A stretch of DNA of 63,345 nucleotides, filler included, from Octopus bimaculoides (Eukaryota): assembly GCF_001194135.2 (NCBI RefSeq). It is 6 parts of 4 records of this genome, joined end to end, with 100 filler letters (N's around TTAATTAATTAA, not from the genome) between each part and the next. Parts side by side here need not be neighbours in the genome. Positions count along the whole stretch, not along the records: positions 19,361 to 44,358 come from NC_068986.1; 5 more parts are not named here. One strand, 5' to 3'. Made by a program: the position numbers and the translations under genes. Numbering within the stretch: the stretch's first letter is position 1; each line of letters starts with the position of its first letter. Below, piece after piece: positions 19,317 to 45,255 of the stretch. Under the pieces are notes generated by a model that saw only the letters and a list, made by a program, of their open reading frames with translations, did not search any database and was not told the DNA's origin.

Positions 19317-19375
19317 NNNNNNNNNNNNNNNNNNNNNNNNNNNNNNNNNNNNNNNNNNNNATGTCTTTTACTAAC

Positions 19376-19430
19376 CTGTAACTAACTGAGCTTTGGTGAA
19401 CACCTGCCTATAATCTAAATTCATGAATGT
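19376..19430 (-). pseudogene. Internally deleted EGF exon copy
   Basis: Begins ACATTCATGAAT (compare ACATTAATGAAT), contains TGTTCACC, and ends ACAG/GTTAGTAAAA like the intact exons. Only 55 nt long, with an in-frame stop. Confidence 0.6.
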
Positions 19431-19519
19431 TAAGTGATGATAATGATGATGGTGATGATGATGATTATGATAACAATGATGACAATGAAGATGATCTTAC
19501 ATCAATGCCTTTTACTAAC

Positions 19520-19642
19520 CTGTACAATTAACGCCATCTCCAATATATCCAGCTTTACAACTACAGTTGAAGCCACCAACTACATTCATACAGCTAGCCT
19601 GAGGTGAACAGTTGTGCTGATTTACATCGCATTCATTAATGT
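19520..19642 (-). CDS. Calcium-binding EGF exon, 123 nt, phase 1-1
   Basis: Same acceptor context, (D)INECDVNQHNCSPQASCMNVVGGFNCSCKAGYIGDGVNCT, GTTAGT donor. Full D-I-N-E-C calcium-binding consensus. Confidence 0.9.
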
Positions 19643-19896
19643 CTGCAAGTTGAAACAAACAAAATTTGAATTAAAACTATTGTATAGAGAGCAGAGTTTT
19701 GAAATCAAGAAGTAGCATAAAGGCACTTAAGAAGACAGGAAACACATTGGTAATTATATCTTAGATAAAATGTAGCTTTAATACATTAAGCTAAAGGGAG
19801 TAATAATAATAAAACATTTATCGATAACCTACCATCTCAGATTTATATCACTGTTCATCACATTTGGAGAATTTTTTATATCACTGTGACATTTGG

Positions 19897-20700
19897 AGAT
19901 CACTGCAAAGCTGCCAAATGGACAACATTCTTGGTTTTAGCATTTGGTGTGAATATGAAGAGATTGTTGCCATTTCCAACCCTGGAATAACCAAGTTGAC
20001 TGTGGGAAAAGCATTGCTGCATGAAGTGAAGTCCAGCAATTTTCAATGACTGTCATTGACTCTTATCAATTTACATTGCAAAACTAACTCTTACTGGAAA
20101 TTGAAGTATCTTGAATTCTAAGGACATGTCTGCTGGAATCAGTGGAATTCTTGAAATAAACACATTTACTCCCTTTCCTCGTCCAGTGAGGATTGCTGCT
20201 TCCAAAAGATGTGGATGCATTTGCCTGACAATCAGTTTTGTTCCACTGCACAGCTTTGGGGGGATCCAGATTTCTCAAAAGCATGATTGGAACTCCTTTC
20301 TTCAATGTCCATTTGAGAGAAAACATTCCAGGAGTATCCAAAAAGTTAGGAAACTCAATAGGATAACTCTCAGACTCATTGGGGTCCACAACAGTATGAA
20401 TTGAGAAATGATTTTCTTCCTCAGTATTGATTGAAAGCATAAGTTTCCAATTGACAATCAGGACAGTTTCATTCTTTGGTGCAAGTATGGCTCTTTCACA
20501 AGATCTTGAAAATTATGTCCAATGTTTGGGTAAACCTTGGTGATCAGCTCTTCTACAGTTTTGACCAAAATGCCACAGCCATTTGGAAATGTGACATCTC
20601 CATTACTGTCTTGCTGAATGCTTCTGTTTCCCAGATCCAGTAGCTGAGCTGCAAATCTTCTACCATCCAAATCTCTGAAGAAACTGACACCGCTGAAAGT
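19897..20700 (-). mobile_element. Helitron RepHel helicase (Pif1-like) remnant
   Basis: Motifs FAAQLLDLGN, LITKVYPNI, YPIEFPNFLDTPG, KGVPIMLLRNLDPP, VSFAM*IDKSQ*QSL, CFSHSQL and SRVG, broken by frameshifts and stops. Confidence 0.9.
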
Positions 20701-21022
20701 CCAATATGGCCAGAAGACCAATTAGGCCAATCTGGCTGAAAGTCCAGTTTGGGCAGAAGAGTTCAATTTGGGTGGAAAGTTTGATTTGGCTGAAAGTTAA
20801 AGTTCTTCAATATTTCTTTCTGAGAGCTCCACTTCACAGACTCAATGGAACTTTAAAACCTCACAAATACAAAACCTTTCACTCTACGTTGGATCCAGTT
20901 TTAAATGAACTGAATTGAAAACATTTTAAAATTCACATGTTTTGGTATTTAAATTCAGATTAAATGTAAAACTTGTAAGTTCACAAACGTTTGATGATGA
21001 TGTACCAATATTTTTTACTAAC

Positions 21023-21148
21023 CTGTACAATTAAAACCATCTCCAATATATCCACCATTACAGCTACAGTTAAAAGTACCAGTAATATTTACACAGCTAG
21101 CCTCAGGCGCACAGCTTTGCAGAGTTGCATTGCTACATCCATTAATGT
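21023..21148 (-). CDS. EGF-like (calcium-binding type) exon, 126 nt, phase 1-1
   Basis: ttgtttgtttcaacttgcag acceptor, (D)INGCSNATLQSCAPEASCVNITGTFNCSCNGGYIGDGFNCT, GTTAGT donor. Six Cys in EGF spacing and a C-x-N-x-x-G-x-F-x-C motif. Confidence 0.88.
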
Positions 21149-21329
21149 CTGCAAGTTGAAACAAACAAGATTTGAATTAAAACTATTGTATAGAGAGCAA
21201 AAATTTTTAATCAGGAAGCTTTGAGTGAGACTGGATGACGTTGGTATCTATATCTTAGATAAAATGTGACATTAATACATTGTATTGTAAAATAAGACAA
21301 TAATATCACAAAGAAATCTTTAATAATGT

Positions 21330-21721
21330 TTGTTGTTGTTATTGACACTCCGTCGCTTACGACGTCGAGGGTTCCAGTTGATCCGATCAACGGAACAGCC
21401 TGCTCGTGAAATTAACGTGCAAGTGGCTGAGCACTCCACAGACACGTGTACCCTTAACGTAGTTCTCGGGGATATTCAGCGTGACACAGTGTGACAAGGC
21501 TGACCCTTTGAATTACAGACACAATAGAAACAGGAAGTAAGAGTGAGAAAAAGTTGTGGTGAAAGAGTACAGCAGGGTTCGCCACCATCCCCTGCCGGAG
21601 CCTCGTGGAGCTTTAGGTGTTTTCGCTCAATAAACACTCACAATGCCCGGTCCGGGAATCGAAACTGCGATCCTGTGACCGCGAGTCCGCTGCCCTAACC
21701 ACTGGGCCATTGCACCTCCAC
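21330..21721 (-). mobile_element. Full-length SINE family B
   Basis: Reverse complement of 1645-2031, TSD CTTTAATAATGT. Confidence 0.9.
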
Positions 21722-21742
21722 CTTTAATAATGTATTTGTTAT

Positions 21743-21859
21743 ATAATTGACTCCATTTCCAGTGAAGCTCTTGTCACAGCGACAGTTGTAACCACCATCA
21801 CTGTTGTAACACATAGCAAATTGTGAACAGTATCAATGGTTGTATGTTTTGCACTAATT
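21743..21859 (-). pseudogene. Decayed EGF exon
   Basis: Reads N*CKTYNH*YCSQFAMCYNSDGGYNCRCDKSFTGNGVNY. Two in-frame stops, last Cys replaced by Tyr, no donor site, and a SINE inserted about 20 nt downstream. Confidence 0.8.
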
Positions 21860-22929
21860 CTAAATGAATTAGATAGAAAGTTAATTATTATCATCATTTT
21901 ACACCTGTATTCCATTCTAGCAAGTAATGGACCCTTTAGATGAGTCGGATGATTGCATCATGCTCCAGCATCTCTGCTCTGGCATGGTTTCTATGATCGG
22001 ATGCTCTTCCTAACACCAACTATGATATAGTGGGTACTGGGTGCGTTTGTGTTGGCAGGAAACCTGACAATGTACATGACTAAAGATCCTATTTGGGGCC
22101 TATGCAACTGAAAGAAGAATAGGAAAGATGACAAAGGATGTTAAAGTGTGAGATTTGTGGAGTCGTGGAGTGAGTAATAAAGCATTTACTAATGAAGAGG
22201 GAATATGTAAGGGCAAAGAAGAAAGAGGAGTAAGTGATAAAGGAGAGCTAAGGCTGATTTGGTGGATTGTGTAAGAGGTATGAGCTGCTATCCCATATTA
22301 TAAGGGTTAGTTGGGTGTAGGCATGAGGAGACAGAGGGACTGAAAAGAACCAATTTGGTGCAGGTGATGAAGAACCTAATGTTGGTTAAGTGAAGGAAGA
22401 AGGGGATTAGAGATTACGGAAAGGCTAAGAGTGGAGGAAGTCAGGATTTGAGGGAGTCTTTGAAGTAGCCCAGAGAGGAAGAGACAGGGGGGGGGGTGAG
22501 TAAGTGGAACAACTGTGGGTATGATACAGTGAGAAAAAGAAAAGAGAGAGTGTTGGATTAGGGGGCAAAAGGATGGTGAGATGTGTGAGGGAAAGGAAGC
22601 TAAGAAGTGTGAGAGAAATCCATCTGGACAAGGTGGAAGGGAAGAGAAAGAGGAAGACCAGCTGGAAGTCATCATAGAATTGGAGAGAAAGGAATGATGT
22701 ATGAAGAAAACGCATCTCATTCAGGAAGGCTGTAGGGAAAGAAGAGGGTTAGAGAATGAAGAGAGGAGGATAGTGAGTGCAAGTGCTTGGAAGGTAGCCC
22801 TTCGATGAGGATGCTGGACTAAAGGATGAGGGTAGCAGAGAGGCAGGGCGAGACGAAGAAAGCAGTGAGAACATTCAAAGCAACAATATTTCCCTTTTGG
22901 CCATATTTTGCCTGAGAGAAAAAGTTTCC

Positions 22930-23230
22930 TCTCCTTCAACATATCACAATCAGTTGTAAAATTCTTTGTGATGCTCAGCATCTTGAAACTGGCTTTCAGG
23001 ATTTTGTTTCATGTCTTTGTAGGTTTTCTTCCACTGGAAGCAACCATTTTGAGGGTTCAGCACTTTTTTATGCTGCAGTCACCATTCAAACACATCACAG
23101 CAACACAGTTTTCTCTCTCACAAATTACATCTGATTCCACTTATACACACAGATTTTCTCTTTGATCAATTACACTGCATCTTTCATGCATGCTGACATT
23201 ACACACTAACACTGGGTTACCACTATGACT
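22930..23230 (-). mobile_element. RTE LINE 3' fragment
   Basis: DCSIKKC*TLKM...GRKPTKT*NKILKASFKMLSITK matches the RTE C-terminal GRPRKTW...DLKML pattern. Confidence 0.65.
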
Positions 23231-23249
23231 ATTTGCAAGGACATATACC

Positions 23250-23720
23250 AAACACTTAGGTCAAATACAAATCCTTTCTTGATGAAGTCACTGCAAATTT
23301 AGAAGTAGTTAAGACTGAGTCAGTTGTTCTACAAGGAGTCTTCAAAGGACATGTTGGTACTGATCACCAAACATGGAAAGAAGTGATTGGGAAGAATGAC
23401 GACTCTGAACTCAGTATAAATGAAGAGGCCTTGCTAAACCTCTAGGCTGGAAATGGACTCTCCATTATGAATGCATTCTTCTAACATAAGAATATCCATA
23501 AATATACCTGGTATAGGGATACTTTGGGACAGAAGTCTTCGACAGATTTGATTACTATCATGTGCCTCTTTCATTCTGTACTGGATGTTCATGTAAAGAG
23601 AATGGTTGAGCTATAGCTGACTGCCATCTAGTTATCTGCAAATTGAGACTATCTACAGCAGGGAGAAGTCACAAAATTGCTTAAGTTCAGTGTGACTTAC
23701 AGGATAAAGTGGGAAACCCT
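23250..23720 (+). mobile_element. LINE AP-endonuclease fragment
   Basis: GVFKGHVG...WKEVIGKN...NAFF*HKNIHKYTWYRDTLGQKSSTDL matches the APE GDFNAHVG and TW...S.ID motifs. Confidence 0.8.
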
Positions 23721-24492
23721 GGCAAATTATTGATCAAAAACAAATATGCAGACACAATTGCACACACAAACACACAAACACACAAACATACATACTCATA
23801 ATCATGAGATTGTGGTTTCAGTTCCTAGATCAGGTGGTGTGTTGTGTTTTTGAGCAAAATACTTCATATCATGTTGCTCTGCAATCACTTTGACACCTGA
23901 TATGTGGTACACCATGCATACCTGTCCAGGTAATGTTGATTTGATGGCGGAGGGACAGTTGAGCTAATGTACAGCACATATTTTTGATCATTAGCAACAA
24001 ATCATATGTGCAAGTCATTCAGCAAAATCTGAGAACTCATACACCGACTCTGACAGAAGAGTCCATCATCATCATCATCCTCATCATTTAGTGTCTGCTT
24101 TCCATGCTGGCATGGGTTAGACAGTTTGACTGGAACTGGTAAGCTGGAGAGCTGTACCAGGTTCTAGTCTAATTAGGTATGATTTCTACGGCTGGATGCC
24201 CTTCCTAACTCTAACCATACCAAAACTGTGGTGGTTGCCTTTTACATGTCACTAGCACGGGTGCCTTTTCCATGTTACTGGCACCATCCATGACTATGAT
24301 CTCAATTGGTCTGACAAGTCTTTTCAAGAACAGCAAAGCATCAAAAGTTTTCATTACTTGTCACTGCCTCTGTGAAGCCCATCATCCAAAGATCATGTGT
24401 CACCAGCCCATCTTATGTCTCCCTGGATCTACCTCTTCCACAGATTCCCTCCACATTTTACTACATACATACACACACACAGACATACACAC

Positions 24493-24539
<47 letters not shown>

Positions 24540-25136
24540 NNNNNNNNNNNNNNNNNNNNNNNNNNNNNNNNNNNNNNNNNNNNNNNNNNNNNNNNNNNNN
24601 NNNNNNNNNNNNNNNNNNNNNNNNNNNNNNNNNNNNNNNNNNNNNNNNNNNNNNNNNNNNNNNNNNNNNNNNNNNNNNNNNNNNNNNNNNNNNNNNNNNN
24701 NNNNNNNNNNNNNNNNNNNNNNNNNNNNNNNNNNNNNNNNNNNNNNNNNNNNNNNNNNNNNNNNNNNNNNNNNNNNNNNNNNNNNNNNNNNNNNNNNNNN
24801 NNNNNNNNNNNNNNNNNNNNNNNNNNNNNNNNNNNNNNNNNNNNNNNNNNNNNNNNNNNNNNNNNNNNNNNNNNNNNNNNNNNNNNNNNNNNNNNNNNNN
24901 NNNNNNNNNNNNNNNNNNNNNNNNNNNNNNNNNNNNNNNNNNNNNNNNNNNNNNNNNNNNNNNNNNNNNNNNNNNNNNNNNNNNNNNNNNNNNNNNNNNN
25001 NNNNNNNNNNNNNNNNNNNNNNNNNNNNNNNNNNNNNNNNNNNNNNNNNNNNNNNNNNNNNNNNNNNNNNNNNNNNNNNNNNNNNNNNNNNNNNNNNNNN
25101 NNNNNNNNNNNNNNNNNNNNNNNNNNNNNNNNNNNN

Positions 25137-25179
<43 letters not shown>

Positions 25180-25252
25180 TATCTAAAAATCGTAAGTCAG
25201 AAAAAATGTGCAATTATATATTTGTCAATAGAATGAGTATATTAATCAAAGT

Positions 25253-25370
25253 GCGCAGTATTATTGATCCATTACAGTTGATCTTTCCAATCGGTTTTGC
25301 ACTGGGTATTAAAACAGTCTTCAATGATGACAGCTATGGCAGAAGATTGGCAACTGTTCTCCTTAACTAG
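25253..25370 (-). pseudogene. Possible very old EGF pseudo-exon
   Basis: CQSSAIAVIIEDCFNTQCKTDWKD aligns without gaps to CSPQASCMNVVGGFNCSCKAGYIG, but two Cys and several Gly are lost. Confidence 0.3.
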
Positions 25371-26597
25371 AAGTGAAAAATGTCACATCCAGCTTGTGGA
25401 TGGTGCAAAGAAAATGAAAGCTGTGGGAGGCGAACTGAGCAAGGATTATATCAAGAGTTATGTTCCTTGGCCCCAAGGTAACTGAGAGGCTATAAAGAGT
25501 CAAGAGTGCCGAAAATATGTGCATTGGTGATGGTGGGGTATTTATCAGAATGTATGTAGGAGCTTCATGTTAGAGCTTCCTTGGTGGGGGATGGAAGTGT
25601 TGGGCAGGTGTCAGAACGTTTAAGCTTATGTTTGGATACATATGTATGTCATTTGAACAGGAGGAGCCGCCGCCGACAACAGTGACTCCTCCGCCTCCTC
25701 CTAGCATGCATTTGCAGAAATAAGACATCAGCTTAAGGAAAGGAAATGAGTAAACGAAGTAGAATGTGTCTTGAATATATANNNNNNNNNNNNNNNNNNN
25801 NNNNNNNNNNNNNNNNNNNNNNNNNNNNNNNNNNNNNNNNNNNNNATATATAATACGTCATTTTCCTTTCTAATGCAAGAAAAGGAAAAGAACTCGTTGA
25901 AATCCGGGTAGCAAACACGCCTATTGAGGACACAATGATATATGATAATCAAGACGTAACCCGATGAATTCAAGGCATTCCTATCCGTGTATAAATGAAC
26001 TATATCGTTGTAACAGCTAGACAAAGGAAGGATTGGCTTTTTATTTCGTGTGGTTCGTATTATTTAGCCCAAGGCCAGGCTTGATCGAGCAGACTTGTGA
26101 TTAAAGATGATTAGGCTGTGATCATCTTTTAAGAAACTCTCTAATATGTGCTCCTTCTCTGTAGTGGATAATCTTGTTAAAATTTGTATCAGGTCAAAGA
26201 GGATCCCACTTTGTCTTGTTATATCCTGTTTTATTTCAATGAAAGAAAAAGAATATACTAATAAAGTGACCTTGAAGGGTAGCCTAAGACTTGCCCTGTC
26301 CTTAACAACAGTTTTGATGTAATAAATAATTTCATTCAGACTGCGACGTCTCCTATTTTAAGTTGGAACCCTATCCCCTTTTATACATTGCGAATGTCCT
26401 TGAGGGAAATTTCAATGTCATAGCTTTTCCTCATATCGTGTTCGTTTACGAAATTATATACGTAACAAAAAATACGTTTTTTCTTGGAGATAGGAGGAGA
26501 AAAGTTTAGCCAAGTGATTTATCAAATATTGCTACTAATTATTCTATAAACCTTCACTGATTTGCACACAGAAAAGCACGTCGATTACTTAATACAG

Positions 26598-26638
<41 letters not shown>

Positions 26639-27853
26639 AAACTGCATTTTTTCAGTGTGTACTCCATTTTTCTTTTCTTCAGAAAAGTGGGGTTGAATTG
26701 GGGAAGAGGGCGCATTTGGCTGTTATTTCTAGCAAAACTGTAAGAACACAGAATTGGATGCTTTGTGGTAATTATTTCGGATTTTTGCCTTATGAGTTCA
26801 AATACTGCCTTGGTTTTAGATTCGATCTAGAGACACCTTGGGTGCTTTTAATGAAATTCATTCACTCTTGCAAATATTCAAGCCATGTTTGATTGGAAGA
26901 TATCGTCCTCTCTCTCTCTCTCTCTCTCTCCCTTAGTCCCAAAGGTCCTGTACAGGTTCATAGGCACGCTTGACTTTATTAAAAATAAAAAAGTTCGAAC
27001 GACTACGTATTATTCACTACCATCCAATATTAAATAAATATTTCTTTATCTAATGTTGGAATCTAGTAGATGCTGTGGTGCTGGCTATATTTTCTAAATG
27101 AACTAAAAGGGTACAATAGATTAAAGAACCATTTGGGTCCTTGAGTAGTGTATCAACGTTACCCCCCTCCCCCATATGTTTTTGAGATATTATTCAGATT
27201 TAAGTAAAACAAAACATAATTTACACAAGTAAACAGTTAAAAAAAGAATAATTTTTTTTAAAGGATTGGGGGAAAAAGAATCCATTTATTATCAACAAAA
27301 TAGCTTTACATTGTCTTAAAAAAACAAGTTATTACGACTATAATTAGTTGTTATAACTTGTTTCATGGAAGATTAAACATGCAACAACAGGTAGATGGAC
27401 TCAAAGGTAAACTAACCGTCTATACAATCCATACACACACACAGACATTTAAATGGGAGTGTATATAATTTGTATATATCTGATATGCATACGAACGTGT
27501 ATATGAATGTAGGACGATGTGTGTGTGTGTGTGTGTGCGTGCGTACGTGCGCGCATTAGGGACGTATATTCCGGGTGCGCTGCACACCCATCGAAAATGG
27601 CATATTCATTATAAATACCAGCGTTACTCATTAATTTAATCACAAATCTCAATAGAAAACTTTTGTTATACTACTGCTTGAAATTTGCTGACACTAGTTG
27701 TGGCAACACACCCAATACAACAACCACCATACGCCTATGGTGGGTAGGTAGGTATAGAAAATGAAAGTGTATTGTTTTTTTACGTGTGTGATTTGTAGAA
27801 AGAAATGATTGAGTCATGCAGGCCTGGTCAGCCATTAGAGAAGTCACAGGAAT

Positions 27854-27974
27854 CGGCACTACTCAAATACAGAGGTCCCGATGCATCTACGTAACGATAT
27901 GTTTTTTACGGAGCACACTCGTTAGGGTTAGGGTTACGCAGATGTGTCGGGACCTTTATATCTAAGTAGTACCG
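27854..27974. mobile_element. Small hairpin MITE with TTAGGG in the spacer
   Basis: Imperfect inverted arms of about 40 bp (CGGCACTACTC...GTAAC and GTTAC...GTAGTACCG) around a spacer containing GTTAGGGTTAGGG. Confidence 0.6.
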
Positions 27975-28029
27975 TTAAGGGAATTCTGTATTTGAGTAGT
28001 ACTCAGAAATCAACACCTTGTAAATTGTG

Positions 28030-28210
28030 ATACGGCTATTGTTCACAACAGAACATGTGCAACCTGCGGAGGATTAAAAAGACGTCCAAAGACTTCATAC
28101 TGTAGTACCTGTTCCTTCTGCGAGCCAGCACAGTTGTGCATTATGCAATAAAATGTGCAAATCTTTGGCAGGGCTCAAGAGTCATATAAGGGCCTCACAT
28201 TGCATTATCA
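28030..28210 (+). mobile_element. LINE ORF C-terminal C2H2 finger remnant
   Basis: CALCNKMCKSLAGLKSHIRASH, typical of RTE-clade ORF ends. Confidence 0.55.
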
Positions 28211-28599
28211 ATGACTCAACTCAATGATTCTCTCTAGCAATAACTTTACTCGTATACAAAGAAGCAGTTACTTATATATTTGTGTGTGTGCATGTGTGTA
28301 TGAGAGAGAAGAGTGATTAATGCTATTTTCTGACAAAGAAATAAAACAATGGATTGACTCTTTATGGTGATAATGGCAGCCATCATCAAATGTTACTGCT
28401 ACAAAGTTGGTAAGGACTTATTAATATTTACTGGAATGTATTGTGGTTCAGACAATGTGTAGCCACATCGCAGGCGTGGCTGTGTCGTAAGAAGCTTACT
28501 TTCCAACCTCATGGTTCCATGATGAGGTAAGGCAGATAGAAGAGATATAGAAATATAGGAGAGATAGTAGAGATATAGAGGGGTATGTGCTAATGATCA

Positions 28600-28920
28600 T
28601 GGAGGTTTGTATGTGGATGTCATGGGAGGGGGGAGGAATTTATATTTAGATTTATGAAAGAATTTAAAAGTGCAGAAGAATTTGTGCTTACATGTAGTGA
28701 AGGCTTCGTTGTGTTTATTAAGCGATTGTGGTAAGTTAGGGGTTGAAATTTTGAGGGTTTCTTTTAAGTAGAATTCACAAATGGAGTGTTGGCCCTGATA
28801 CAGGATACCCCAAACTATTATAGCCCAGGAAATGTTATATTGTATTTTTCTATGAATTAGATGGTGTACGTGGCTGGCTAGTGATGTGGAACAGCTATTC
28901 TCATTATATTTAAACAAGTT
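28600..28920 (-). mobile_element. PLE endonuclease C-terminal remnant, same family as 43050-44000
   Basis: STSLASHVHHL...CEFYLKE...LNKHNEAFTTCKHKFFCTFKFFHKSK parallels STILANHIHHL...LNKHNEALSTCNHCFFHTFKFYHKSK. Confidence 0.8.
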
Positions 28921-28959
28921 TAAATGTGCATAATATCTTTGTTTAAAATTTGTAGTAGA

Positions 28960-29975
28960 TCCGATGTAGTAGCAATGTAGGAGTTATTTACTATGTTGCG
29001 AACGGTGCATTGGAAGCCACCTACATCCACCCTTGCAGGTCTCTCAGGTCCTTTGGGAGGATATTAAAGAGATGTGGTTCCCTGAAGCCCAGGCTCTTGC
29101 AGTATCTTGTCCTATATCTTGATGATAAATTTGGAGTCCTTAGAACTATGCAGTGGCGCCCAGTTCTAGTATTTGTGCAACTCTCGATGCCAAAGTTTGG
29201 GACAAGTCCCTCCAGGATCTTCCAGATGTATATTATGGCATATCATTCTTGCCTATGCTCTAAGGAATAGAGTCTTAATCTCTTGAGTCTTTCCCAATAG
29301 CTTATATGCTGCATAGAGGCTATCTTCTTTGTGTAGCTTCACTGGATAGCCTCAAGTTCTGCAATTAATTTGACACTGGTTGGTGACTATAGCTGAGAGC
29401 AATAGTCAAAGTGGCTTAGGACAAGTGTCCGCCAGAGGACCATCATGGTTTCCGATATCTTGTTCTAAAAGTTCTAAGAACCCATCTGGTCAGCCACCTG
29501 CATTTCATTGCCAACTTAGCAACATACACATGGAAGGATGCATCATTATTGATGTAAATGCCCAGGTCCCGCACTGACTATGTCTCTGGGATTGCAATTC
29601 CTCCAGGTCCAGTGTATTTAATTCGTATTGCATTTAGTTTTTCAGCATTAAACTGCATGCTATTCTTTTCAGCCCACTTGTATATTTCATCCAGCTCACA
29701 TTGCGAGTATCACCTGTGAGACTTGTGTATCATCTGCATAACTTGTGATTATGGCTCTCTGTGTGGCTGAGGGCATATCTCAGATGGCCATTATGAATGG
29801 TAGTGGTCCCAAAACAGTGTCTTGTGGAACAGCACTCACTATTTGCCTGTCAATGGAGGTGGCCTCATTGGCAACTACCACCTGACTTCTATCCTTCAGA
29901 AATCCATGCAGCCATTCTCCCAATTTTCCAACTATGCTGAGATCACACAGTTTGTGACATCATCCATGATCGACT
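28960..29975 (-). mobile_element. CR1/Jockey-group LINE RT fragment
   Basis: GKLGEWLHGFLKDRSQVVV...SAVPQDTVLGP...YADDT, decayed. Confidence 0.88.
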
Positions 29976-30025
29976 TATCAACATATATATATATATATGT
30001 GTGTGTGTATATATATAGGTGTGTG

Positions 30026-30066
<41 letters not shown>

Positions 30067-30137
30067 ATAAGGATTTACTTTTTGCAATGGCATAAAAAAA
30101 ACCAAGGTTGTGTACATTATAAAACATTTATAAATAA

Positions 30138-30185
30138 GTCTTACAGCTGTTTCCAGGATATTTATTATATCTCTACATCGGAGAT
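30138..30185 (-). ncRNA. Degenerate copy of the same PLE-type hammerhead
   Basis: ATCT-CCGATGT-...-GAAAC-AGCT-GTA-AGAC. A9 is mutated and stem II is imperfect. Confidence 0.55.
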
Positions 30186-31446
30186 GGTGTGAGAGGATGG
30201 TTAAGCAATAGTTAGTTTAGTTAAGATAGGAAATAGAGAGTGAATGTAGGGATATTGTATTTGTAAATCCATTGATTAGGCAGAATGATATACATATAAG
30301 ATTCCAATACCTTGGGAGTAAAATCCAATAGTCTTTAAGATTAGTCACTGCATTTGTAAATCTATTATTAAGATTCCAATCCCCTATGAGTAAAATCCAA
30401 CAGTCTTTGAAATTGGTCATTCCGAAAACAGAGTTTATACACAGTGTTATTGAATCAAGGGTTCTGTTTAAAATATATATATATGTATATACATACATAT
30501 ATATACATATATATCCAGAGGATATCCTTGTTGCTTATTTTGATTTTAATCACCATACTTTGAAATTGTNNNNNNNNNNNNNNNNNNNNNNNNNNNNNNN
30601 NNNNNNNNNNNNNNNNNNNNNNNNNNNNNNNNNNNNNNNNNNNNNNNNNNNNNNNNNNNNNNNNNNNNNTGTGTGTGTGTGTGTGTGTAAAAGGCAACAC
30701 CTGAAAGACAACTTGATGCTGGTGTTGTAACCGTTAATGTTTACAGGTGAATGAATATATCTTTCCTTGTGATTTCAAGTTACAAGGCTTTTCAAACACA
30801 CACACACCTTTATCAAACGTAAAATTGATGGTGTTAACGATGCATTCAAAGTAATATAATATAGATGAGAAGAAATGTGATTTAACAGCATCATAAATCC
30901 TCTAACTATTATAATTAATTACATGATAAAAATAACAAAACTATACAAGTTGGTCAGAATTTCCGAAATATCTAAAATTCTGTAAACAAAATTATTTAAA
31001 AGAGAAATGGTAAAACAGAAGTTTTCTTCACAACATCAATGTTTAAACCATATATAAATGTTATTTTTAGTGAGATGGAAATGATAAAAGTGCGAGATAA
31101 TAATTATTAGTGACTGCTGTTGTCATGGAAACAATAAGTAATCTTCCCACTTCTAAGTGATTTGTCAAATTTAGCAAGTTTCCCCCTTTTGTTTTGATTA
31201 AAATACCTTTGATTTATTAAAACAAGTTAGGCATACGTTTCCACTTTTTACTGTTTTCCAGCGATCGAACGAAGGTGTAAATAAATGAAAATACATAATG
31301 AAAAAGAAATCTTATAATTAAAATCTTATAATTAAAAAGAAATCTTATAATTTAAGTAATTGCTATCATAACATATTTTGTATCGTTCTTAAAATGAAAA
31401 CCTTGAATTAAAAATAATCAAAATTAAAAATAATCAAAATACTTAC

Positions 31447-31540
31447 CAGTTACCGCTGCCACGTGCAATGAAGTTCCAAAACTATAAAATAACGAGACGG
31501 CAATACAACATAAAGAGAGGATATTGTGCCAGGAGTTCAT
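31447..31540 (-). CDS. First coding exon, signal peptide of a secreted or membrane EGF-repeat protein
   Basis: Translates MNSWHNILSLCCIAVSLFYSFGTSLHVAAVT plus G, then a canonical GTAAGT donor (phase 1). It has a hydrophobic core and lies downstream of a TATA box. Confidence 0.75.
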
Positions 31541-31621
31541 AATTTTGTCCTGGTTCAAAGCAGTATATATTCAAATACACCTGAATACGGACACCTTGCT
31601 CACAGTTAACTCTTTTCGTGG

Positions 31622-31658
31622 GACTGGAAGTTTAAGGAGAGATCGCTTGACTTTTATA
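31622..31658 (-). promoter_or_regulatory. Core promoter: TATA box plus initiator-like motif
   Basis: Minus strand reads TATAAAAG at 31658-31651 and CCAGTC with its A at 31625, 33 nt downstream. An 85-nt leader follows before the ATG at 31540. Confidence 0.7.
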
Positions 31659-33439
31659 GGTATTGAATAACAAAGTAGCTGCGACAATACGAGTAGTAGT
31701 AGTAGTAGTAGTAGTAACATTGACAGTTGTCATTGTAGAAGTAGTTGTTCATAAATCGAACTCATCCAATGACCTGGGACAGTGACTGACTACACATACA
31801 AGAGTATGTTTTATCAATACCACACACCTATAAAGCTTCTAAAATGTTTTAACAAGTGGGACAACCACCGCCGCTGCCGACCAATGTCGCCCTTTTAAAT
31901 AGAAGACACTGTTTCGTTGAACAACTAATTGGAATCTATTGTTTCAGATATTTTACTCTGGACCTTTTTTCTCTTCCCCTAACTCGCGCACGTATGGATG
32001 TATGTATGTATATATACGTATGTACACATGTGTGCGTTGTGTGTGTGTGTATACAGATACACGTATGTTTTATATCTATCTATCTATATGTATGTATGTA
32101 TTTATGTGTGTGTGTGTGTGTAAAGGTAAGATCCAAAGATCAAGGTGTAGGAAGTTAGTGAGTTTTAAGCACTCTGTAGAAGATATATAAAAAACAACTT
32201 TGAAGAACAAATCTGAGATTATATGAGTACATATAATGTTTTCCTCTCTAACTCTACTTTCTACACATTTCGATTGACTCCCTGACGAGTTAACATGGCA
32301 TCTCCTAATGACAATGTAAACTTCATATAATTAAGGTCTCCTTGGCCTGAAGAGTAGCTTACAGTTGACCCCTTGTTTAGATAATTATTACTTCCAAAGT
32401 TCTGCTAGTTCTGAAACATATATAACAAACTGATTATAGGAGATTGAGAAATAATATAAATAAATAACAAGAAATATCAGGAAGAACTTTGAGAAAGGAA
32501 TCAATTACTAATTTTAAAAAAATGAACAAAGAACAGCTGGAAAGCAACATAAAAAAATAACTTTGTGCTGCTTTGCTACAACATCAGAATTAAAAAAATG
32601 TCTGAGAAGGGTACAGAACCTGTAAACAGTTACTATAGCAGTGAAGCGAAACCTCTTTCTCGTTAGCCTTACCTTAATGATCTGAAGCAAATTCTAAGCA
32701 AGATAATTATTTCAGGAAATATCTCTGAGATTATAATTGTTCAGTTTCCTTGACTTTATTTGTTTAAAAGTTACATCACCTGAAGTTATGGGGTCAATAG
32801 ATTTAGAATACAAAAGTAGACATACCATTCCAGTTCTTACTATGTACCTGGAAAGTGATTGCCCAGAATATGAACAATTTTATATTGTTGTTGCTAACAG
32901 AGCTTTACAATCCCTAGCATCTCAAGATTCACAATGTTTGTTTAATGTGATGAAGACAATAGTTGAAATTATGATTTTCCCCAACCTATAAGCTGAACTA
33001 TATTAAAATAAGTGTCTGGTAGAGTTGCAAGAACTCTGGGATATTCAATAAACATGCACTGCTCTGCAAATGAGACTCTGACACCAAGTGGTACAATTTT
33101 CCTGCAAGTAATAAAATTACTGCTGTTTATTTGTAAGAATGAAGCCCCTCTAGAAAACATACAACATAATTCATCCAAGAATTTCAACATCAACAAGTAT
33201 TTCATATTTATCCTACTATCTTCAACTAATTTCCTGTCATTTTTTTCTTTCCCTGTTGTGAAATTGGCTGGCACAAGAGACTGCTGCAAAGTGAAGAATG
33301 ATTCTATGTTTCAAATGAGATCAGTAAAAGTGTTCAACTTTTATCATCTTGCATTCTGAGGTGGCTTCAATGGTGTTCACAAATCAGAAAAAGCATAAAG
33401 ATGAAGGGTACAGTTTACAGTTGGTTACAAACAAGGAGC

Positions 33440-33860
33440 CTCAGCTGTGAGTTGAACAGAACTGTGAACTCATAGTCAGAGAAGTCCAATAACCAAAATC
33501 ATAGCTGTGGCCAGTGTCCCCTGACTGGCTCCCACTCCAGTTGCACGTAAAATGCATCATCTGAACATGGTCGATGCCAGTGTCCCCTGACTCGCTCCTG
33601 TGCCAGTACCACATAAAAAGTACCATCCAAATGTGGTCAATGCGAGGTCCACCTGACTGGCGCCCATGCTGGTGGCATGTAAAAAGCACCCACTACACTC
33701 TCAAAGTGGTTGGCGTTAGGAAGGGCATCCAGCTGTAGAAACATTGCCAGATCAGATTGGATCCTGGTGCAGATGCTGGCTCTCTAAACCTCAGTCAAAC
33801 CATCCAACTCATTCCAGCATGGAAAATGGACCTTAAACAATGATGATGATGATGATATAT
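33440..33860 (+). mobile_element. RTE-tail element (family E) with internal 65-70 bp tandem units
   Basis: Repeated GCCAGTGTCCCCTGACT units, then GTTAGGAAGGGCATCCAGC...CAGCATGGAAA...TTAAAC(GAT)n. Confidence 0.8.
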
Positions 33861-34689: not shown

Positions 34690-36480
34690 GAGGGTATTGA
34701 ATTTAACCAAACCCAAGAAGATACAGGTAATACCGAGTAAGTGCTGTATACCGACTAGTTATGCCCCAGTCGTTGTATGAACAGGATTGGGGATTATAAG
34801 TCGTGTATTAGCGTGTGTATGTATAAATATATAAAAGGATAAAGAGAGCAATGGTAAAGTTGGAAATATATTTTATGGATAGAGTCTTACAGCTGTTTCA
34901 GGGAAGATCCAATGCATCCCTTCATCGGAGACAGAAATAGTAAAGGAATCAATTATTATATCCATAAGCGGAGAGTTATAGTAGGAAGTGAGAGTGAGTG
35001 TGATGCGCTGAAAAAAGAAAGAAAGAACAGTACTTGGAGTGTAGCTTCATTCCAGTAGTAAGTATCCGTGTAAAATAATCCTTGTGGGAATTTTCCGGAG
35101 ATAGTTGCTGCAGCAAAGGCTGAAATAGCAGAGGTGGATATATGCCATATCATGTCCGAGGTATATTGCTTGTGTTTACTTGAAGGATGTCTCACTTGAT
35201 TTGGTCCAGTACACCACCATGTTTATTCTTTGGCATGCTGGTAGAGCACCGAGGTTTGTTTGTGATTCTTATAGTCCCTCCAATGTTCATTTACACGCTC
35301 AGTCAAACTTCTCGCCGTTTCACCTATGTATGTCGTGTTTCTGTTTTTACAATCACCATCCATACAACTTATTTTGTAGACTACATTTCTGGCTTTGCAG
35401 TTGATACCATGACTATATTTGCACACAATGCAACTCTCTTCTATACACCTTATCTTTCTGAAGGGGTATGTTTTGCATATTATCGATCTAATGGATCTCC
35501 CTGGTTTTCTATGACATTTATCTTCAACTTAGTACTTTTGAGGATTTTTCTAAATCTGCGGGTTAGTTCTTCGTGTGGTGTGGCGTCTATAAACATTACT
35601 CCTTGGAACTTGTCGGTATTGTACCATGTGCTGTTTCTGTTTGTTTTGTCACTAATTCTTTGTAGTTGATTCCACTGTTTATTACGGTACCTAGGTTCTG
35701 TTCCATCTGTATCTTTGACAACAATCTCCTCAAATTTCTTGCTAGCTCCTCTGTATACTCGGATTCTATCTTTCTGGCTGTATCCTGAAAACTGCATGCG
35801 ATGCATGAAGTCTTGTATATGTCTTTGCCTCTCCCAGGGACTGCACGGTGGGGGGGGGGATATGTTTTTCATTATTCTGACTAAATCGGCTATTAATATA
35901 TTAATTTTCACACTGTGCGATAGAGCCAAATTCTTATAGATAACATACTTTGAAGATATAGGTTTCATATAATGTGAGTGGAGGATTTGAACTTTGTCGT
36001 TAATTGTTTCTAGCCAAAGTTCTGTGTCAAGTACCGGGAGTCTCTTGTTTAGGTGTTTTGTTGGGTAATCTATTGTTACTTTGACACTCTGGTGTATTGC
36101 ATTAGCTATATTCTGGATGTTTTCCATCACGATCTTCTCGTTCTCTTCAGTCTGAATGTTTGATGGTGTTTCGACTACGATGTTAATGTCATCCACATAC
36201 CTCCCGTATAGTTTGATTGTTATTGAGTGTTCCTCGAGAGTTTTTTTTTTCAGCTTTTTGTCCCACCAGGTCATGAATAGGCTTGCTACGTCCCTGGCCA
36301 CACAGACACCAATAGCCGCTCCTTGGACCTGCATGTATAGTTTTTCATTGAATTTAACTATATGGTTCTGCAGGGTGGTCTTCAGACTTGCACCTACAGC
36401 ATGTGCAACCATTTTTCGTGTTTGGATATTATCCTCTGGGTCGTGGGTGGGTGTATTCAATTTTAAGTTTCTATTTTCTT
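34690..36480 (-). mobile_element. 5'-truncated Penelope-like retroelement (RT + GIY-YIG endonuclease + 3' UTR)
   Basis: ORF 35480-36460 has QGAAIG and RYVDD RT motifs. A frameshifted continuation carries NVVYKISC...YIGETARSLTERVNEH (GIY-YIG). A hammerhead motif lies downstream. Confidence 0.93.
34884..34932 (-). ncRNA. Minimal type I hammerhead ribozyme motif
   Basis: GTCT-CCGATGA-AGGGA(loop 12)TCCCT-GAAAC-AGCT-GTA-AGAC. Stems I and II pair, stem III is the palindrome ACAGCTGT, and the cleavage triplet is GUA. Confidence 0.75.
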
Positions 36481-36797: not shown

Positions 36798-37169
36798 AAA
36801 TAGGGTTATATTCGGTTTAAATGAGGTTATATTCGTTATATTAAATATTAAATAGGGTTATATTCGGTTTAAATGANNNNNNNNNNNNNNNNNNNNNNNN
36901 NNNNNNNNNNNNNNNNNNNNNNNNNNNNNNNNNNNNNNNNNNNNNNNNNNNNNNNNNNTGAGGTTATATTCGTTATATTAAATATTAAATAGGCTTATTT
37001 TCGGTTTAAATGAGGTTATATTCGTTATATTAAATATTAAATAGGGTTATATTCGGTTTAAATGAGGTTATATTCGTTATATCAAATATTAAATAGGGTT
37101 ATATTCGGTTTAAATGAGGTTATATTCGTTATATTAAATATTAAATAGGGTTATATTCGGTTTAAATGA
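36798..37169 (+). repeat. 52-bp minisatellite spanning a gap
   Basis: Unit AAATAGGGTTATATTCGGTTTAAATGAGGTTATATTCGTTATATTAAATATT starts at 36798, 36850, 36987, 37039, 37091 and 37143. Confidence 0.95.
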
Positions 37170-39479: not shown

Positions 39480-39690
39480 TACCTGCATCAACTTGTTATA
39501 AAAGCAGGTAGTAATTTTACCTTATCCTTATTCTTAGTGCAAGTTTTGAAGAGTGCAGTTCGATTTTAACAGTTACTTTTTCAAAGTTATAATGAAAGTG
39601 ACAAAGGGGCATATTCAGCATATTTTGCTTTATGAGATCAATAAAGGCAACAATGCAGAAGAAGGTGCGAGGAATATTAATGCATCCCTG
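39480..39690 (+). mobile_element. Mariner transposase 5' fragment
   Basis: MKVTKGHIQHILLYEINKGNNAEEGARNIN resembles a mariner N-terminal helix-turn-helix region. Confidence 0.75.
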
Positions 39691-39699
39691 GGCAACTAT

Positions 39700-40400
39700 G
39701 AACCGCCACAGGCCTGTTTCAGTCACATCAATATTAACCTTGTCAGCCCCCTACCACCTTCACAGGGTTGCTCATACTTACTGAAAAAAGATGCACCCCC
39801 ATATGTAGGAAAGAAGTTGGAAGAAATTCCATTCACTGCACCCAGTGTAAGCTATGGACACATAAGAGGTGCAGTGGAATCACAGGTAGATTAACAGATA
39901 AAGTTGCCTCTGTATGTTGGCAGATGTGCAGGAACAATAAGCACTAAAAGCACACGGGACTTAGATTCTCTTAAATGCCCAGGAAGCTCTCTTGAGGTTG
40001 TAGATAGGTTCTGTTACCTAGGTGACCAAATAAGCAATGGTGGAGGATGTTCTGAAAGTATTGTTTCTAGAATAGATATTGGGAGGAGGAAGTTCAGAGA
40101 GCTCTGTTGGCAACAAAAGGACTCTCTCTCAGAGTGAAGGGCAGACTATATGGTACTTGTATGTGAACGGCTATACTCCATGGTAGTGAGACATGGGCTC
40201 GGAATGCAGAAGACATGTGTAGACTGGAGAAAAACAAAGGTAGTATGATCTGTTGGATGTGCAACATCAGTGCACATGTACAGTGAAGTGCAAATTTGTT
40301 GAGAGAAAAGTTGGGCATAAGAGGAATCAAAATTAACATGCAAGAGAGAAAACATGACTATGTTGGTTTGGACATGTGATGCATATGAATGAGGACAGCT
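39700..40400 (+). mobile_element. RTE-clade LINE, RT C-terminal fragment
   Basis: LEVVDRFCYLGDQISNGGGCSES...KFREL followed by degenerate downstream RTE motifs. Confidence 0.85.
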
Positions 40401-44000: not shown

Positions 44001-45255
44001 ATTCCTCTTTCATACTCGAATATCACAACCATTTAATTATATTCATGTGTATATGTGTGTGAATGTATGTATGTATGTATGTATGTATGTATGTATGTAT
44101 GTATGTATGTATGTATACAAGGTATATATACCTGCGTGTGCAGGAGCAATAATACATACAGATACACATATATATATGGGTGTACATATGTACATATACA
44201 TATGAGTACGAGTTGTATGCGTAGATGTTGATATGTATAAATATTTGGCTGAAACACATAAATAAATAAATAAATAAATAAATATATATATACATATTTA
44301 ATATATGCATCTGTATACATCTTCACATATATATTTTCTTCTCATAACCTATATATATNNNNNNNNNNNNNNNNNNNNNNNNNNNNNNNNNNNNNNNNNN
44401 NNTTAATTAATTAANNNNNNNNNNNNNNNNNNNNNNNNNNNNNNNNNNNNNNNNNNNNTCTATCTATCTATCTATCTATCTATCTGTCTATCTATCTATC
44501 TATCTAAAGCAGGATCAGTGATAACAAATCCGAGACCTTATATGGTGACTCTAATTTCTAAATAATCAAATATATCTTGTACGAACGAAAATACTAGATT
44601 AGAAAATTTGATAGTCTGCGTATAAGGGACGAATGCATGAAAGTTTCAAGTATATAAATAAATGTTCATTGTTCAACATATTTCTTCATTAAATTTATGT
44701 GTGTGTGTGTTTGTGGGCGTGTTTGTACGCGTGTGTGTTTTTGCATATGTTTGTGATATGTATATAAATATATATTTTGAGCATACGTCACAATGACGAT
44801 AAACCTCGGATATATAATTAGAGCTTATCCCTATGGTCTGAAAGAGACGGGTTAAATATTCGGAGAGAATTCTAATCAAAGCGAAACGTCAAAAACTCAA
44901 GAAACATTTGCCAATTAAAAGGTCACAAAAGCAAATGAAATAGGAAGAAAATATTTCTGGGAAGTTCATCTATCATATATAATTTGATATTGTATTGGTA
45001 AGATAAATCGTTCGTTTATGATTTTCTTTATTCATTTTGTTGTTAACGAAGTTGTTTTTGCAGATATGAGACAAATAACGACGTTGTTTTTGATGTTATC
45101 TTTACCATTCCGTTTGTTTTATTCATTTGTAATTAAATATCGAATATCGGTCCCATATGAATAGGAAAAGATATTTAATCATAACAAAACAAAAACGTTT
45201 GAAGCAGTGTTTACAAACTCGCAAATAGAATTTCAACAAACACACATACAAATAC

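What the first reader, a model, noticed from the sequence alone, without database searches (positions are those of the whole stretch)
19376..31658. Hidden minus-strand gene: TATA, signal peptide exon and tandem calcium-binding EGF exons
Seen: three short exons with canonical splice sites, all joined in phase 1, give MNSWHNILSLCCIAVSLFYSFGTSLHVAAVT-DINGCSNATLQSCAPEASCVNITGTFNCSCNGGYIGDGFNCT-DINECDVNQHNCSPQASCMNVVGGFNCSCKAGYIGDGVNCT. The introns are 10298 and 1380 nt. Each exon is below the ORF-track size cutoff. The two EGF modules carry seven N-x-S/T sequons. Known: phase 1-1 one-exon-per-domain layout is typical of cbEGF arrays in fibrillin-like, uromodulin-like and EGF-adhesion-GPCR proteins. 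Inferred: exon 1 splices to these EGF exons. The 3' end is missing and may lie in gaps.
Basis: partly seen in the sequence, partly recalled or inferred. Interest (0 to 1): 0.7.

Follow-up and report, generated by a model that had tools for sequence, protein, structure and literature searches.

The report
Expressed octopus signal-peptide plus EGF-repeat gene start
The three short minus-strand exons are the real, transcribed start of an octopus gene for a secreted or surface protein built from EGF modules, an ordinary kind of animal gene whose remainder, apparently a run of near-identical EGF exons, lies beyond the edge of this piece.

Summary
On the minus strand, exon 1 (ATG at 31540, donor after 31447), exon 2 (21148-21023) and exon 3 (19642-19520) have GT..AG borders. 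RNA contigs from six runs and raw RNA reads from three more join 31447 to 21148 and 21023 to 19642. All three assembly gaps lie inside intron 1, so they affect only its nominal length, not the reading frame. Raw-read depth ends about 25-35 nt downstream of TATAAAAG (31658-31651), which fits a TATA-directed start. Pfam finds two EGF_3/EGF_CA modules, but only the second meets the calcium-binding consensus; the first reads DINGC.

Exon 3 is 3.4-8.8 times deeper than exons 1-2 in RNA. Contigs read exon-3 end, then another 123-nt EGF exon (ending EGFTGDGVTCA), then exon 3 again. This suggests the transcript continues as an array of near-identical alternating EGF exons beyond the piece edge.

The host is most likely Octopus bimaculoides or a close relative. 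The gene is not octovafibrin. Whether it ends in a ZP domain, a 7TM domain or neither cannot be seen. It is a new member of a known kind, of modest interest.

The parts
31651..31658 (-). TATA box (TATAAAAG)
   Evidence: Read. Raw RNA depth ends 25-35 nt downstream of it.
31541..31625 (-). 5' UTR. The inferred start is near an Inr-like CCAGTCC with its A at 31625. There is no upstream ATG.
   Evidence: In one search, depth holds a plateau from 31452 to 31595, falls between 31596 and 31631, and molecule ends sit at 31599 and 31610. One search finds no ATG in 31541-31660. The exact start is inferred, not mapped.
31447..31540 (-). Exon 1 coding part: MNSWHNILSLCCIAVSLFYSFGTSLHVAAVT plus the first base of the Asp codon. 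This is the signal peptide.
   Evidence: Sequence. The hydrophobic core ILSLCCIAVSLFYSF has a mean Kyte-Doolittle score of 2.22, and small residues at -1/-3 fit cleavage after G22, S24 or A29. Exon 1 is held in full by at least 18 RNA-type run sets. SignalP was not available.
21149..31446 (-). Intron 1 (GT..AG, phase 1), nominally 10,298 nt. It contains the three assembly gaps and a very high-copy repeat at 21312-21797.
   Evidence: The junction is shown. Unique parts of 21150-26000 carry no RNA in X13 and almost none in X17.
21023..21148 (-). Exon 2: EGF module 1, DINGCSNATLQSCAPEASCVNITGTFNCSCNGGYIGDGFNCT. It has six cysteines and does not meet the calcium-binding consensus.
   Evidence: Sequence, Pfam, RNA depth and junctions.
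19643..21022 (-). Intron 2 (GT..AG, phase 1), 1,380 nt, with a Pif1 2B-domain (Helitron-like) fragment at 20084-20440.
   Evidence: The joint that skips 1,380 nt is.
19520..19642 (-). Exon 3 ('A-type'): calcium-binding EGF module DINECDVNQHNCSPQASCMNVVGGFNCSCKAGYIGDGVNCT. In RNA it is 3.4-8.8 times deeper than exon 2.
   Evidence: Sequence (matches PS01187). Depth and neighbouring exons.
19361..19519 (-). Start of intron 3, cut off by the piece edge. Its last 20 nt (19380-19361) repeat the exon-3 donor TACAG|GTTAGTAAAAG.
   Evidence: There is no RNA depth on 19505-19519.

Best explanation
This is the genuine, transcribed 5' end of a protein-coding gene of an octopus, most likely Octopus bimaculoides or a very close relative, on the minus strand.

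A TATA-type promoter drives a first exon that carries an 85-nt leader and a cleavable signal peptide. That exon is spliced across a roughly 10-kb intron directly to EGF exons. Each exon encodes one module and all are in phase 1. The modules are of the EGF_3 type (C-x-C-x-x-G-Y/F-x-G-D-G-x-x-C). The first is not calcium-binding and the second is a canonical calcium-binding EGF.

Inferred from RNA depth and contig structure: beyond the piece edge the transcript continues as a tandem array. Exon-3-type exons recur about 4-9 times and alternate with a second 123-nt EGF exon type. The product would therefore be a long, N-glycosylated, disulfide-rich, partly calcium-stiffened rod of EGF modules that is secreted or displayed on the cell surface. 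The C-terminal part, which decides the family and the role (matrix, ZP polymer or receptor), was not seen.
For: Shown:
- Exon sequences, splice sites and phases.
- Both junctions in Logan RNA contigs of six runs and in raw reads of three runs.
- A transcription start consistent with the TATA box.
- EGF_3 at 2.5e-20 and EGF_CA at 1.4e-17, with the PROSITE patterns.
- A hydrophobic N-terminus with -3/-1 cleavage sites.
- Exon 1 present in at least 18 RNA-type run sets from six studies and absent from sister runs of the same studies.

Support for the array:
- The exon 3 to exon 2 word-depth ratio is 5.7-8.8 in five runs, and the two depths correlate at r=0.99. The raw-read ratio is 3.4-5.3.
- Contigs of 178 and 276 nt read: last 28 nt of an exon-3-type exon, then a 123-nt other exon, then exon 3.
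- At the 5' edge of exon 3, 139/64/35 raw reads come from an exon ending EGFTGDGVTCA, against 25/19/9 from exon 2.
- A rare third variant reads ...FNCSCKSGFAG.
- The last 52 nt of introns 1 and 2 are 51/52 identical while the exons are 78% identical, as expected for tandemly duplicated exon units.

Organism: a transposon-like ORF in the piece is 85% identical to O. bimaculoides LOC128248506.
Against: - The 3' part of the gene is not in the piece, and the sequence of the second exon type was seen only at its last 35 nt.
- The excess depth of exon 3 could come partly from a paralogous, co-expressed gene rather than from the same transcript. The genomic copy number of exon 3 was not measured.
- No signal-peptide predictor was available.
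- The first EGF lacks the calcium-ligand Glu/Gln.
- Some contigs and a few raw reads extend upstream of the TATA box to about 31823-31866, so a minor upstream start exists.
- Species identity rests on one transposon match and on run dates.
Confidence: 0.85

Rival explanations
1. It is the octopus member of the molluscan EGFZP (uromodulin-like) family: signal peptide, two EGF modules, then a ZP polymerisation domain, a furin site and a membrane anchor. The extra exon-3-like RNA would then come from a different gene.
For: - In EGFZP/EGFL genes the signal peptide and the two EGF modules each sit in their own conserved exon, and EGFZP homologues are reported in O. bimaculoides and O. vulgaris (PMC9290575).
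- Uromodulin is among the best solved-structure matches, at E=1.1e-19.
- The window shows exactly one signal-peptide exon and two EGF exons.
Against: - RNA contigs show exon-3-type sequence preceded and followed by further EGF exons.
- Exon 3 depth tracks exon 2 depth at r=0.99, which fits one transcript with many EGF modules better than two genes.
- No ZP sequence is available to test.
Confidence: 0.15
2. It is an EGF-TM7 adhesion GPCR (ADGRE/CD97-like): signal peptide, a non-calcium-binding first EGF, several calcium-binding EGF modules in phase-1 exons that are alternatively spliced, then GAIN and seven-transmembrane domains.
For: - The order 'first EGF non-calcium-binding, next calcium-binding' matches.
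- ADGRE5 and EMR2 appear among the solved-structure matches, at E=3.7e-17 and 3.7e-10.
- The representative with the highest identity (54%) is named ADGRE2-like, from Lingula.
- Ratios of exon 3 to exon 2 that differ between runs (3.4-8.8) could reflect alternative use of EGF exons.
Against: - The Lingula protein has only EGF domains in Pfam, so its name reflects EGF similarity alone.
- NELL and uromodulin score better than ADGRE5.
- No GAIN or 7TM sequence is available. EGF-TM7 receptors are, to my knowledge, a vertebrate group.
Confidence: 0.07
3. It is octovafibrin, the tandem-EGF egg-tether protein of O. bimaculoides, or an isoform of it.
For: Same likely organism, and a secreted protein with many tandem EGF modules (PMC10336842).
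Against: - Octovafibrin has a C-type lectin domain between the signal peptide and the EGFs. Here exon 1 joins an EGF exon directly.
- Its EGF cysteines stand at positions 5, 10, 16, 25, 27 and 36 and none of its EGFs is calcium-binding. Here they stand at 5, 12, 18, 27, 29 and 40, and exon 3 matches PS01187.
- Its tryptic peptides are of another EGF subtype and none occurs in the peptide here.
Confidence: 0.01
4. It is a chance set of ORFs, or a dead pseudogene fragment, with no spliced product.
For: Each exon is short, and the piece is rich in transposon debris.
Against: - Spliced RNA is present in many runs, with exact junctions.
- The reading frame is intact.
- The domain E-values are about 1e-20.
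Confidence: 0.01

Closest known systems
Generic EGF_3 / calcium-binding EGF array proteins of animals (NELL1/2, fibrillin/LTBP-like, amphioxus and Ciona multi-EGF proteins)
   Same: The module type is the same: D-x-N-E-C ... C-x-N-x4-F-x-C-x-C-x-x-G-Y-x-G-D-G-x-x-C. The best solved-structure matches are the NELL2 and NELL1 EGF domains, at E=4e-30 and 4e-22. A full library search gives 17,503 hits, with giant EGF_3/EGF_CA arrays on top.
   Different: The highest identity is 54%, and no near-identical protein was found. Here the EGF array follows the signal peptide directly. The accompanying domains (TB, vWC, TSPN, fn3 and so on) are unknown.
Molluscan EGFZP / uromodulin-like proteins (LUSP-17, PfuEGFZP)
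   Same: Signal-peptide exon plus one exon per EGF module. The family is present in octopus genomes (PMC9290575). Uromodulin matches at E=1.1e-19.
   Different: EGFZP proteins have two EGF modules, whereas RNA here points to many more. The ZP domain, furin site and membrane anchor were not seen.
Octovafibrin (O. bimaculoides XP_014771937.1)
   Same: A secreted octopus protein made of many tandem EGF modules. It shows what such an array can do mechanically (PMC10336842).
   Different: It has flanking C-type lectin domains, a shorter EGF subtype that does not bind calcium, and different peptides. This is not the same gene.
EGF-TM7 adhesion GPCRs (ADGRE5/CD97, ADGRE2/EMR2)
   Same: Signal peptide, then a non-calcium-binding EGF, then calcium-binding EGFs, one per phase-1 exon. 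Moderate sequence matches.
   Different: There is no evidence for GAIN or 7TM domains. The similarity is confined to the EGF modules.

Membership tests
EGF-like domain, EGF_3 / EGF_CA (Pfam PF12947 / PF07645) | Profile match above the curated cut-off, with six cysteines in the EGF spacing | tested here: met
   EGF_3 scores 72.8 bits (cut-off 28.5) and EGF_CA 64 bits (cut-off 27), two stretches each. The six-cysteine pattern is found at both exons.
Calcium-binding EGF (PROSITE PS01187) | [DEQN]-x-[DEQN](2)-C ... C-x-[DN]-x(4)-[FY]-x-C | tested here: met
   Met by module 2 (DINEC..., exon 3). Module 1 (DINGC, exon 2) fails at the fourth position. Both have the Asx-hydroxylation pattern.
Secretory protein | N-terminal signal peptide | tested here: inconclusive
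   A hydrophobic 15-residue core (mean Kyte-Doolittle 2.22) is followed by sites that fit the -3/-1 rule. No trained predictor (SignalP) was available.
Octovafibrin | C-type lectin domain directly after the signal peptide | tested here: not met
   Exon 1 splices directly to an EGF exon. The feature is taken from PMC10336842.
Octovafibrin | EGF repeat with cysteines at positions 5, 10, 16, 25, 27 and 36, and no calcium-binding EGF | tested here: not met
   Here the cysteines stand at 5, 12, 18, 27, 29 and 40 of a 41-42-residue unit, and exon 3 matches PS01187 (compared). The published peptides are absent.
Molluscan EGFZP / uromodulin-like | Signal-peptide exon followed by EGF exons | tested here: met
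   The feature is taken from PMC9290575.
Molluscan EGFZP / uromodulin-like | Exactly two EGF modules, then a ZP domain, a furin site and a transmembrane segment | not testable with these tools
   The 3' part lies beyond 19361. RNA suggests more than two EGF modules, which argues against membership but does not settle it.
EGF-TM7 adhesion GPCR | GAIN domain and seven-transmembrane region after the EGF modules | not testable with these tools
   The downstream sequence is not in the piece.
Fibrillin / LTBP | TB (8-Cys) domains interspersed among calcium-binding EGFs | not testable with these tools
   The downstream sequence was not seen. The fibrillin EGF matches are only moderate, at E=1.5e-9.

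The most novel reading that the evidence does not exclude
The array of near-identical EGF exons may be variable. The number of exon-3-type units per transcript differs between samples, with ratios from 3.4 to 8.8. If this reflects copy-number differences between individual animals, or regulated use of cassette exons, the gene would encode a length-variable EGF rod: a VNTR-like or splicing-tuned surface or matrix protein missing from the protein collection searched, perhaps because the assembly breaks inside the repeat.
Probability: 0.12. Interest if true: 0.55.

Novelty: new member of a known kind. Interest (0 to 1): 0.3.

Why it matters
The result adds a verified gene start to a gapped part of an octopus assembly: promoter, signal-peptide exon and two EGF exons with read-supported junctions. 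No protein in the large collection searched carries this peptide.

It also flags that the scaffold probably ends inside a tandem array of near-identical EGF exons. That kind of region is often collapsed by short-read assembly and missed by gene prediction.

Biologically it is one more multi-EGF extracellular protein, a very common kind. Octopus already has a studied example, octovafibrin, which shows that such arrays can be load-bearing materials. A second, calcium-binding-type array would be of some interest to people working on cephalopod extracellular matrix. It does not open a new question.

Tried and rejected
- **Word-indexed protein search with the joined peptide:** no hit, so no annotated counterpart was found.
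- **Full HMMER search of 1.84 billion representatives:** 17,503 hits, but ranked by number of EGF repeats. The highest identity is 54% and no orthologue can be recognised. The names of ten top hits and the Pfam content of nine show only generic EGF arrays.
- **Reading the exon that follows exon 3:** three read-laying runs (11, 25, 26) gave the end of the upstream 'B' exon but never listed the loose ends at 19520. The start of B and the continuation of the transcript stay unread.
- **Laying reads on 25900-31446:** The third gap and the upstream half of intron 1 were therefore not examined with reads.
- **Closing the gaps with DNA contigs:** contigs stop at the microsatellites that flank gap 1 and at the edges of gap 2.
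- **tRNA and Rfam scans of the piece:** nothing found.
- **Octovafibrin as the identity:** rejected on domain order, cysteine spacing and peptides.
- **Supplement of PMC9290575, for octopus EGFZP sequences:** not held.


Full report
**What is in the sequence.**
- The coding part of exon 1 runs from the ATG at 31540 to 31447. Exon 2 is 21148-21023 (126 nt) and exon 3 is 19642-19520 (123 nt).
- The donors are ACTG|GTAAGT and, twice, ACAG|GTTAGT. Both acceptors are ...TTTCAACTTGCAG|ACA. Every junction splits a codon after its first base (phase 1).
- The seven N-x-S/T sequons are there, although four are N-C-S/T with a disulfide cysteine in the middle.
- A six-frame scan for the six-cysteine EGF pattern finds only these two EGF exons in the piece. 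The single other match, at 44088-44183, lies in a TGTA microsatellite.
- Pfam gives EGF_3 (E=2.5e-20) and EGF_CA (E=1.4e-17), two stretches each.
- One correction: the PROSITE calcium-binding pattern is met only by the second module (DINEC...). The first reads DINGC, with glycine where a Glu/Gln calcium ligand should stand. Both modules carry the Asx-hydroxylation and EGF_2 patterns.

**The gaps.**
All three N runs named in the finding (24540-25136, 25782-25845, 30570-30669) lie inside intron 1, between exon 1 and exon 2.
- Frame continuity therefore does not depend on them. What matters is whether the two exons are joined in RNA, and they are (next section).
- Only the stated intron length (10,298 nt) is nominal.
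- Short-read DNA contigs end at the edges of gap 2. Gap 1 is flanked by (TACA)n and (AT)n microsatellites that attract unrelated contigs. Neither gap was closed.
- Across 21150-26000, X13 has no RNA outside repeats and X17 only a trace of word depth, so no additional exon shows there.
- The missing 3' end cannot be in these gaps. It lies downstream of exon 3, beyond the piece edge at 19361.

**Transcription and splicing.**
- Exon 1 is held word for word by at least 18 RNA-type run sets from six studies. It is absent from other runs of the same studies, so expression is real and not universal.
- Exon 1 to exon 2: RNA contigs that cover exon 1 end at 31447 and continue with the reverse complement of the start of exon 2. 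Contigs and 30/16/17 raw reads that cover exon 2 continue at 21149 with the reverse complement of the end of exon 1.
- Exon 2 to exon 3: the joint from 21023 to 19642 skips 1,380 nt with CT..AC ends on the plus strand, that is GT..AG on the minus strand. It is seen in three contig sets and in 25/19/9 raw reads.

**Promoter.**
- TATAAAAG lies at 31658-31651.
- Raw-read depth is flat from 31452 to about 31595 and falls between 31596 and 31631. It is near zero upstream, apart from cross-mapping on the (AGT)8 microsatellite at 31692-31716. Molecule ends cluster at 31599 and 31610.
- An Inr-like CCAGTCC has its A at 31625, 33 nt after the first T of the TATA box.
- This fits a TATA-directed start and an 85-nt leader without an upstream ATG. 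The exact start is inferred, not mapped.
- One contig and a few reads reach upstream to about 31823-31866, so a weak upstream start or read-through exists.

**The N-terminus.**
The first 31 residues have a 15-residue hydrophobic core (ILSLCCIAVSLFYSF, mean Kyte-Doolittle 2.22). It is followed by small residues at -1/-3, giving possible cleavage after G22, S24 or A29. That is what a signal peptide looks like. No trained predictor was available, so this stays an inference.

**What was not in the finding: a repeated exon.**
- In every RNA run examined, exon 3 is much deeper than exons 1-2. The ratio is 5.7-8.8 by contig word depth in five runs, with the two depths correlated at r=0.99. It is 3.4-5.3 by raw reads in three runs.
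- Contigs of 178 and 276 nt read: last 28 nt of an exon-3-type exon, then 123 nt of another exon, then exon 3.
- At the 5' edge of exon 3, 139/64/35 raw reads come from that other exon, against 25/19/9 from exon 2. Its last 35 nt translate to EGFTGDGVTCA, an EGF_3-type ending.
- A rare third variant shares the first 88 nt of exon 3 and then reads ...CKSGFAG.
- Contigs stop two bases after the end of exon 3, so at least two different exons follow it.
- At DNA level, the 52 nt before the two acceptors are 51/52 identical while the exons are 78% identical. The last 20 nt of the piece repeat the exon-3 donor.
- Taken together, this points to a tandem array of duplicated units, each an exon plus its intron. 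I infer that the transcript continues as roughly 4-9 exon-3-type modules alternating with a second type, and that the piece ends inside, or just before, this repeat.
- The alternative, that the extra depth comes from a co-expressed paralogue, is not excluded. I could not measure DNA copy number.

**Organism.**
A 326-residue transposon-like ORF at 35480-36460 has as its best named match an O. bimaculoides protein at 85% identity. The run history is compatible with that species, as far as I know: DNA and RNA runs from 2015 onwards. This is an inference, and a sister species cannot be ruled out. RNA runs under a second organism label hold exon 1 unchanged.

**What it is like, and what it is not.**
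- The modules are ordinary EGF_3 / calcium-binding EGF. The best solved-structure matches are NELL2, NELL1, uromodulin, ADGRE5, Notch and fibrillin.
- The best library hits are giant EGF arrays from amphioxus, Ciona, Lingula and others, at 37-54% identity.
- No protein in the word-indexed collection shares the peptide, although that collection contains O. bimaculoides RefSeq proteins. The gene, or at least these exons, appears to be unannotated there.
- The literature search turned up octovafibrin, the egg-tether protein of O. bimaculoides made of 29 tandem EGFs (PMC10336842). It is a different gene. It has a C-type lectin domain after the signal peptide, a shorter EGF with cysteines at 5, 10, 16, 25, 27 and 36, no calcium-binding EGF, and peptides of another subtype.
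- The molluscan EGFZP family has the same 5' exon layout and exists in octopus (PMC9290575). However, it has two EGFs followed by a ZP domain. The RNA evidence for many EGFs argues against it, and the ZP part cannot be tested here.
- An EGF-TM7 receptor is a weaker possibility, for the same reason.

**How it most likely works.**
- Shown: a TATA-compatible start, a spliced mRNA, and an N-terminal hydrophobic leader followed by EGF modules.
- Inferred from established knowledge of calcium-binding EGF arrays (fibrillin, Notch): consecutive calcium-binding EGF modules form a disulfide-locked rod stiffened by calcium. Here the rod would be heavily N-glycosylated and exposed outside the cell as matrix, coat or receptor ectodomain.
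- Which of these it is depends on the unseen C-terminal part.

**Verdict.**
The gene is a new member of a very common kind. The likely array of near-identical EGF exons is the only mildly unusual feature, and it probably explains why the assembly ends here.

Noticed in passing
window 21312-21797 (in intron 1): A very high-copy repeat. Logan word depth is about 10^6 in DNA runs and 10^4-10^5 in RNA runs, far above the flanks. ARAGORN finds no tRNA-like head.
   Followed up: partly
window 20084-20440 (-), in intron 2: A 118-residue ORF with a Pif1 helicase 2B-domain match (E=1.7e-7), which looks like a Helitron/Pif1-like fragment. A few RNA reads carrying two base differences map nearby (20085, 20108), so other copies are transcribed.
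   Followed up: partly
window 35480-36460 (-): A 326-residue ORF with a YVDD motif. It is 85% identical to O. bimaculoides LOC128248506 and 45-54% identical to many unnamed proteins, with no Pfam family. It is probably a retroelement remnant, and I used it only to place the organism.
   Followed up: partly
window 39553-39894 (+): An ORF with a Mos1-transposase HTH_48 match (E=1e-7), a mariner-like fragment.
   Followed up: no
window 36959-37169, beside the gap at 36877-36958: A 52-nt unit repeated 4.1 times at 97% identity, directly after an assembly gap.
   Followed up: no
window 19361-19380 (piece edge): The last 20 nt of the piece repeat the exon-3 donor region (TACAG|GTTAGTAAAAG) about 140 nt downstream of the real donor, with no EGF coding sequence in front. 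This may be a trace of the next repeat unit or an assembly join.
   Followed up: partly
window 19520-19642 compared with 21023-21148: The exon 3 to exon 2 RNA depth ratio differs between runs, from 3.4 to 8.8. It could reflect copy-number differences between animals, alternative splicing or a paralogue. This is unexplained.
   Followed up: partly
window 31692-31716 and 31740-31866: An (AGT)8 microsatellite just upstream of the TATA box attracts unrelated reads. Separately, one RNA contig (X15) and a thin trail of raw reads (X40) extend upstream to about 31823-31866, suggesting weak upstream transcription.
   Followed up: no
window 31447-31625: RNA runs under a second organism label (organism C: X44, X45) hold exon 1 with all sampled words. 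That label must be the same species or a very close one.
   Followed up: no
window 33510-33666: A 66-nt unit repeated 2.4 times at 75% identity.
   Followed up: no
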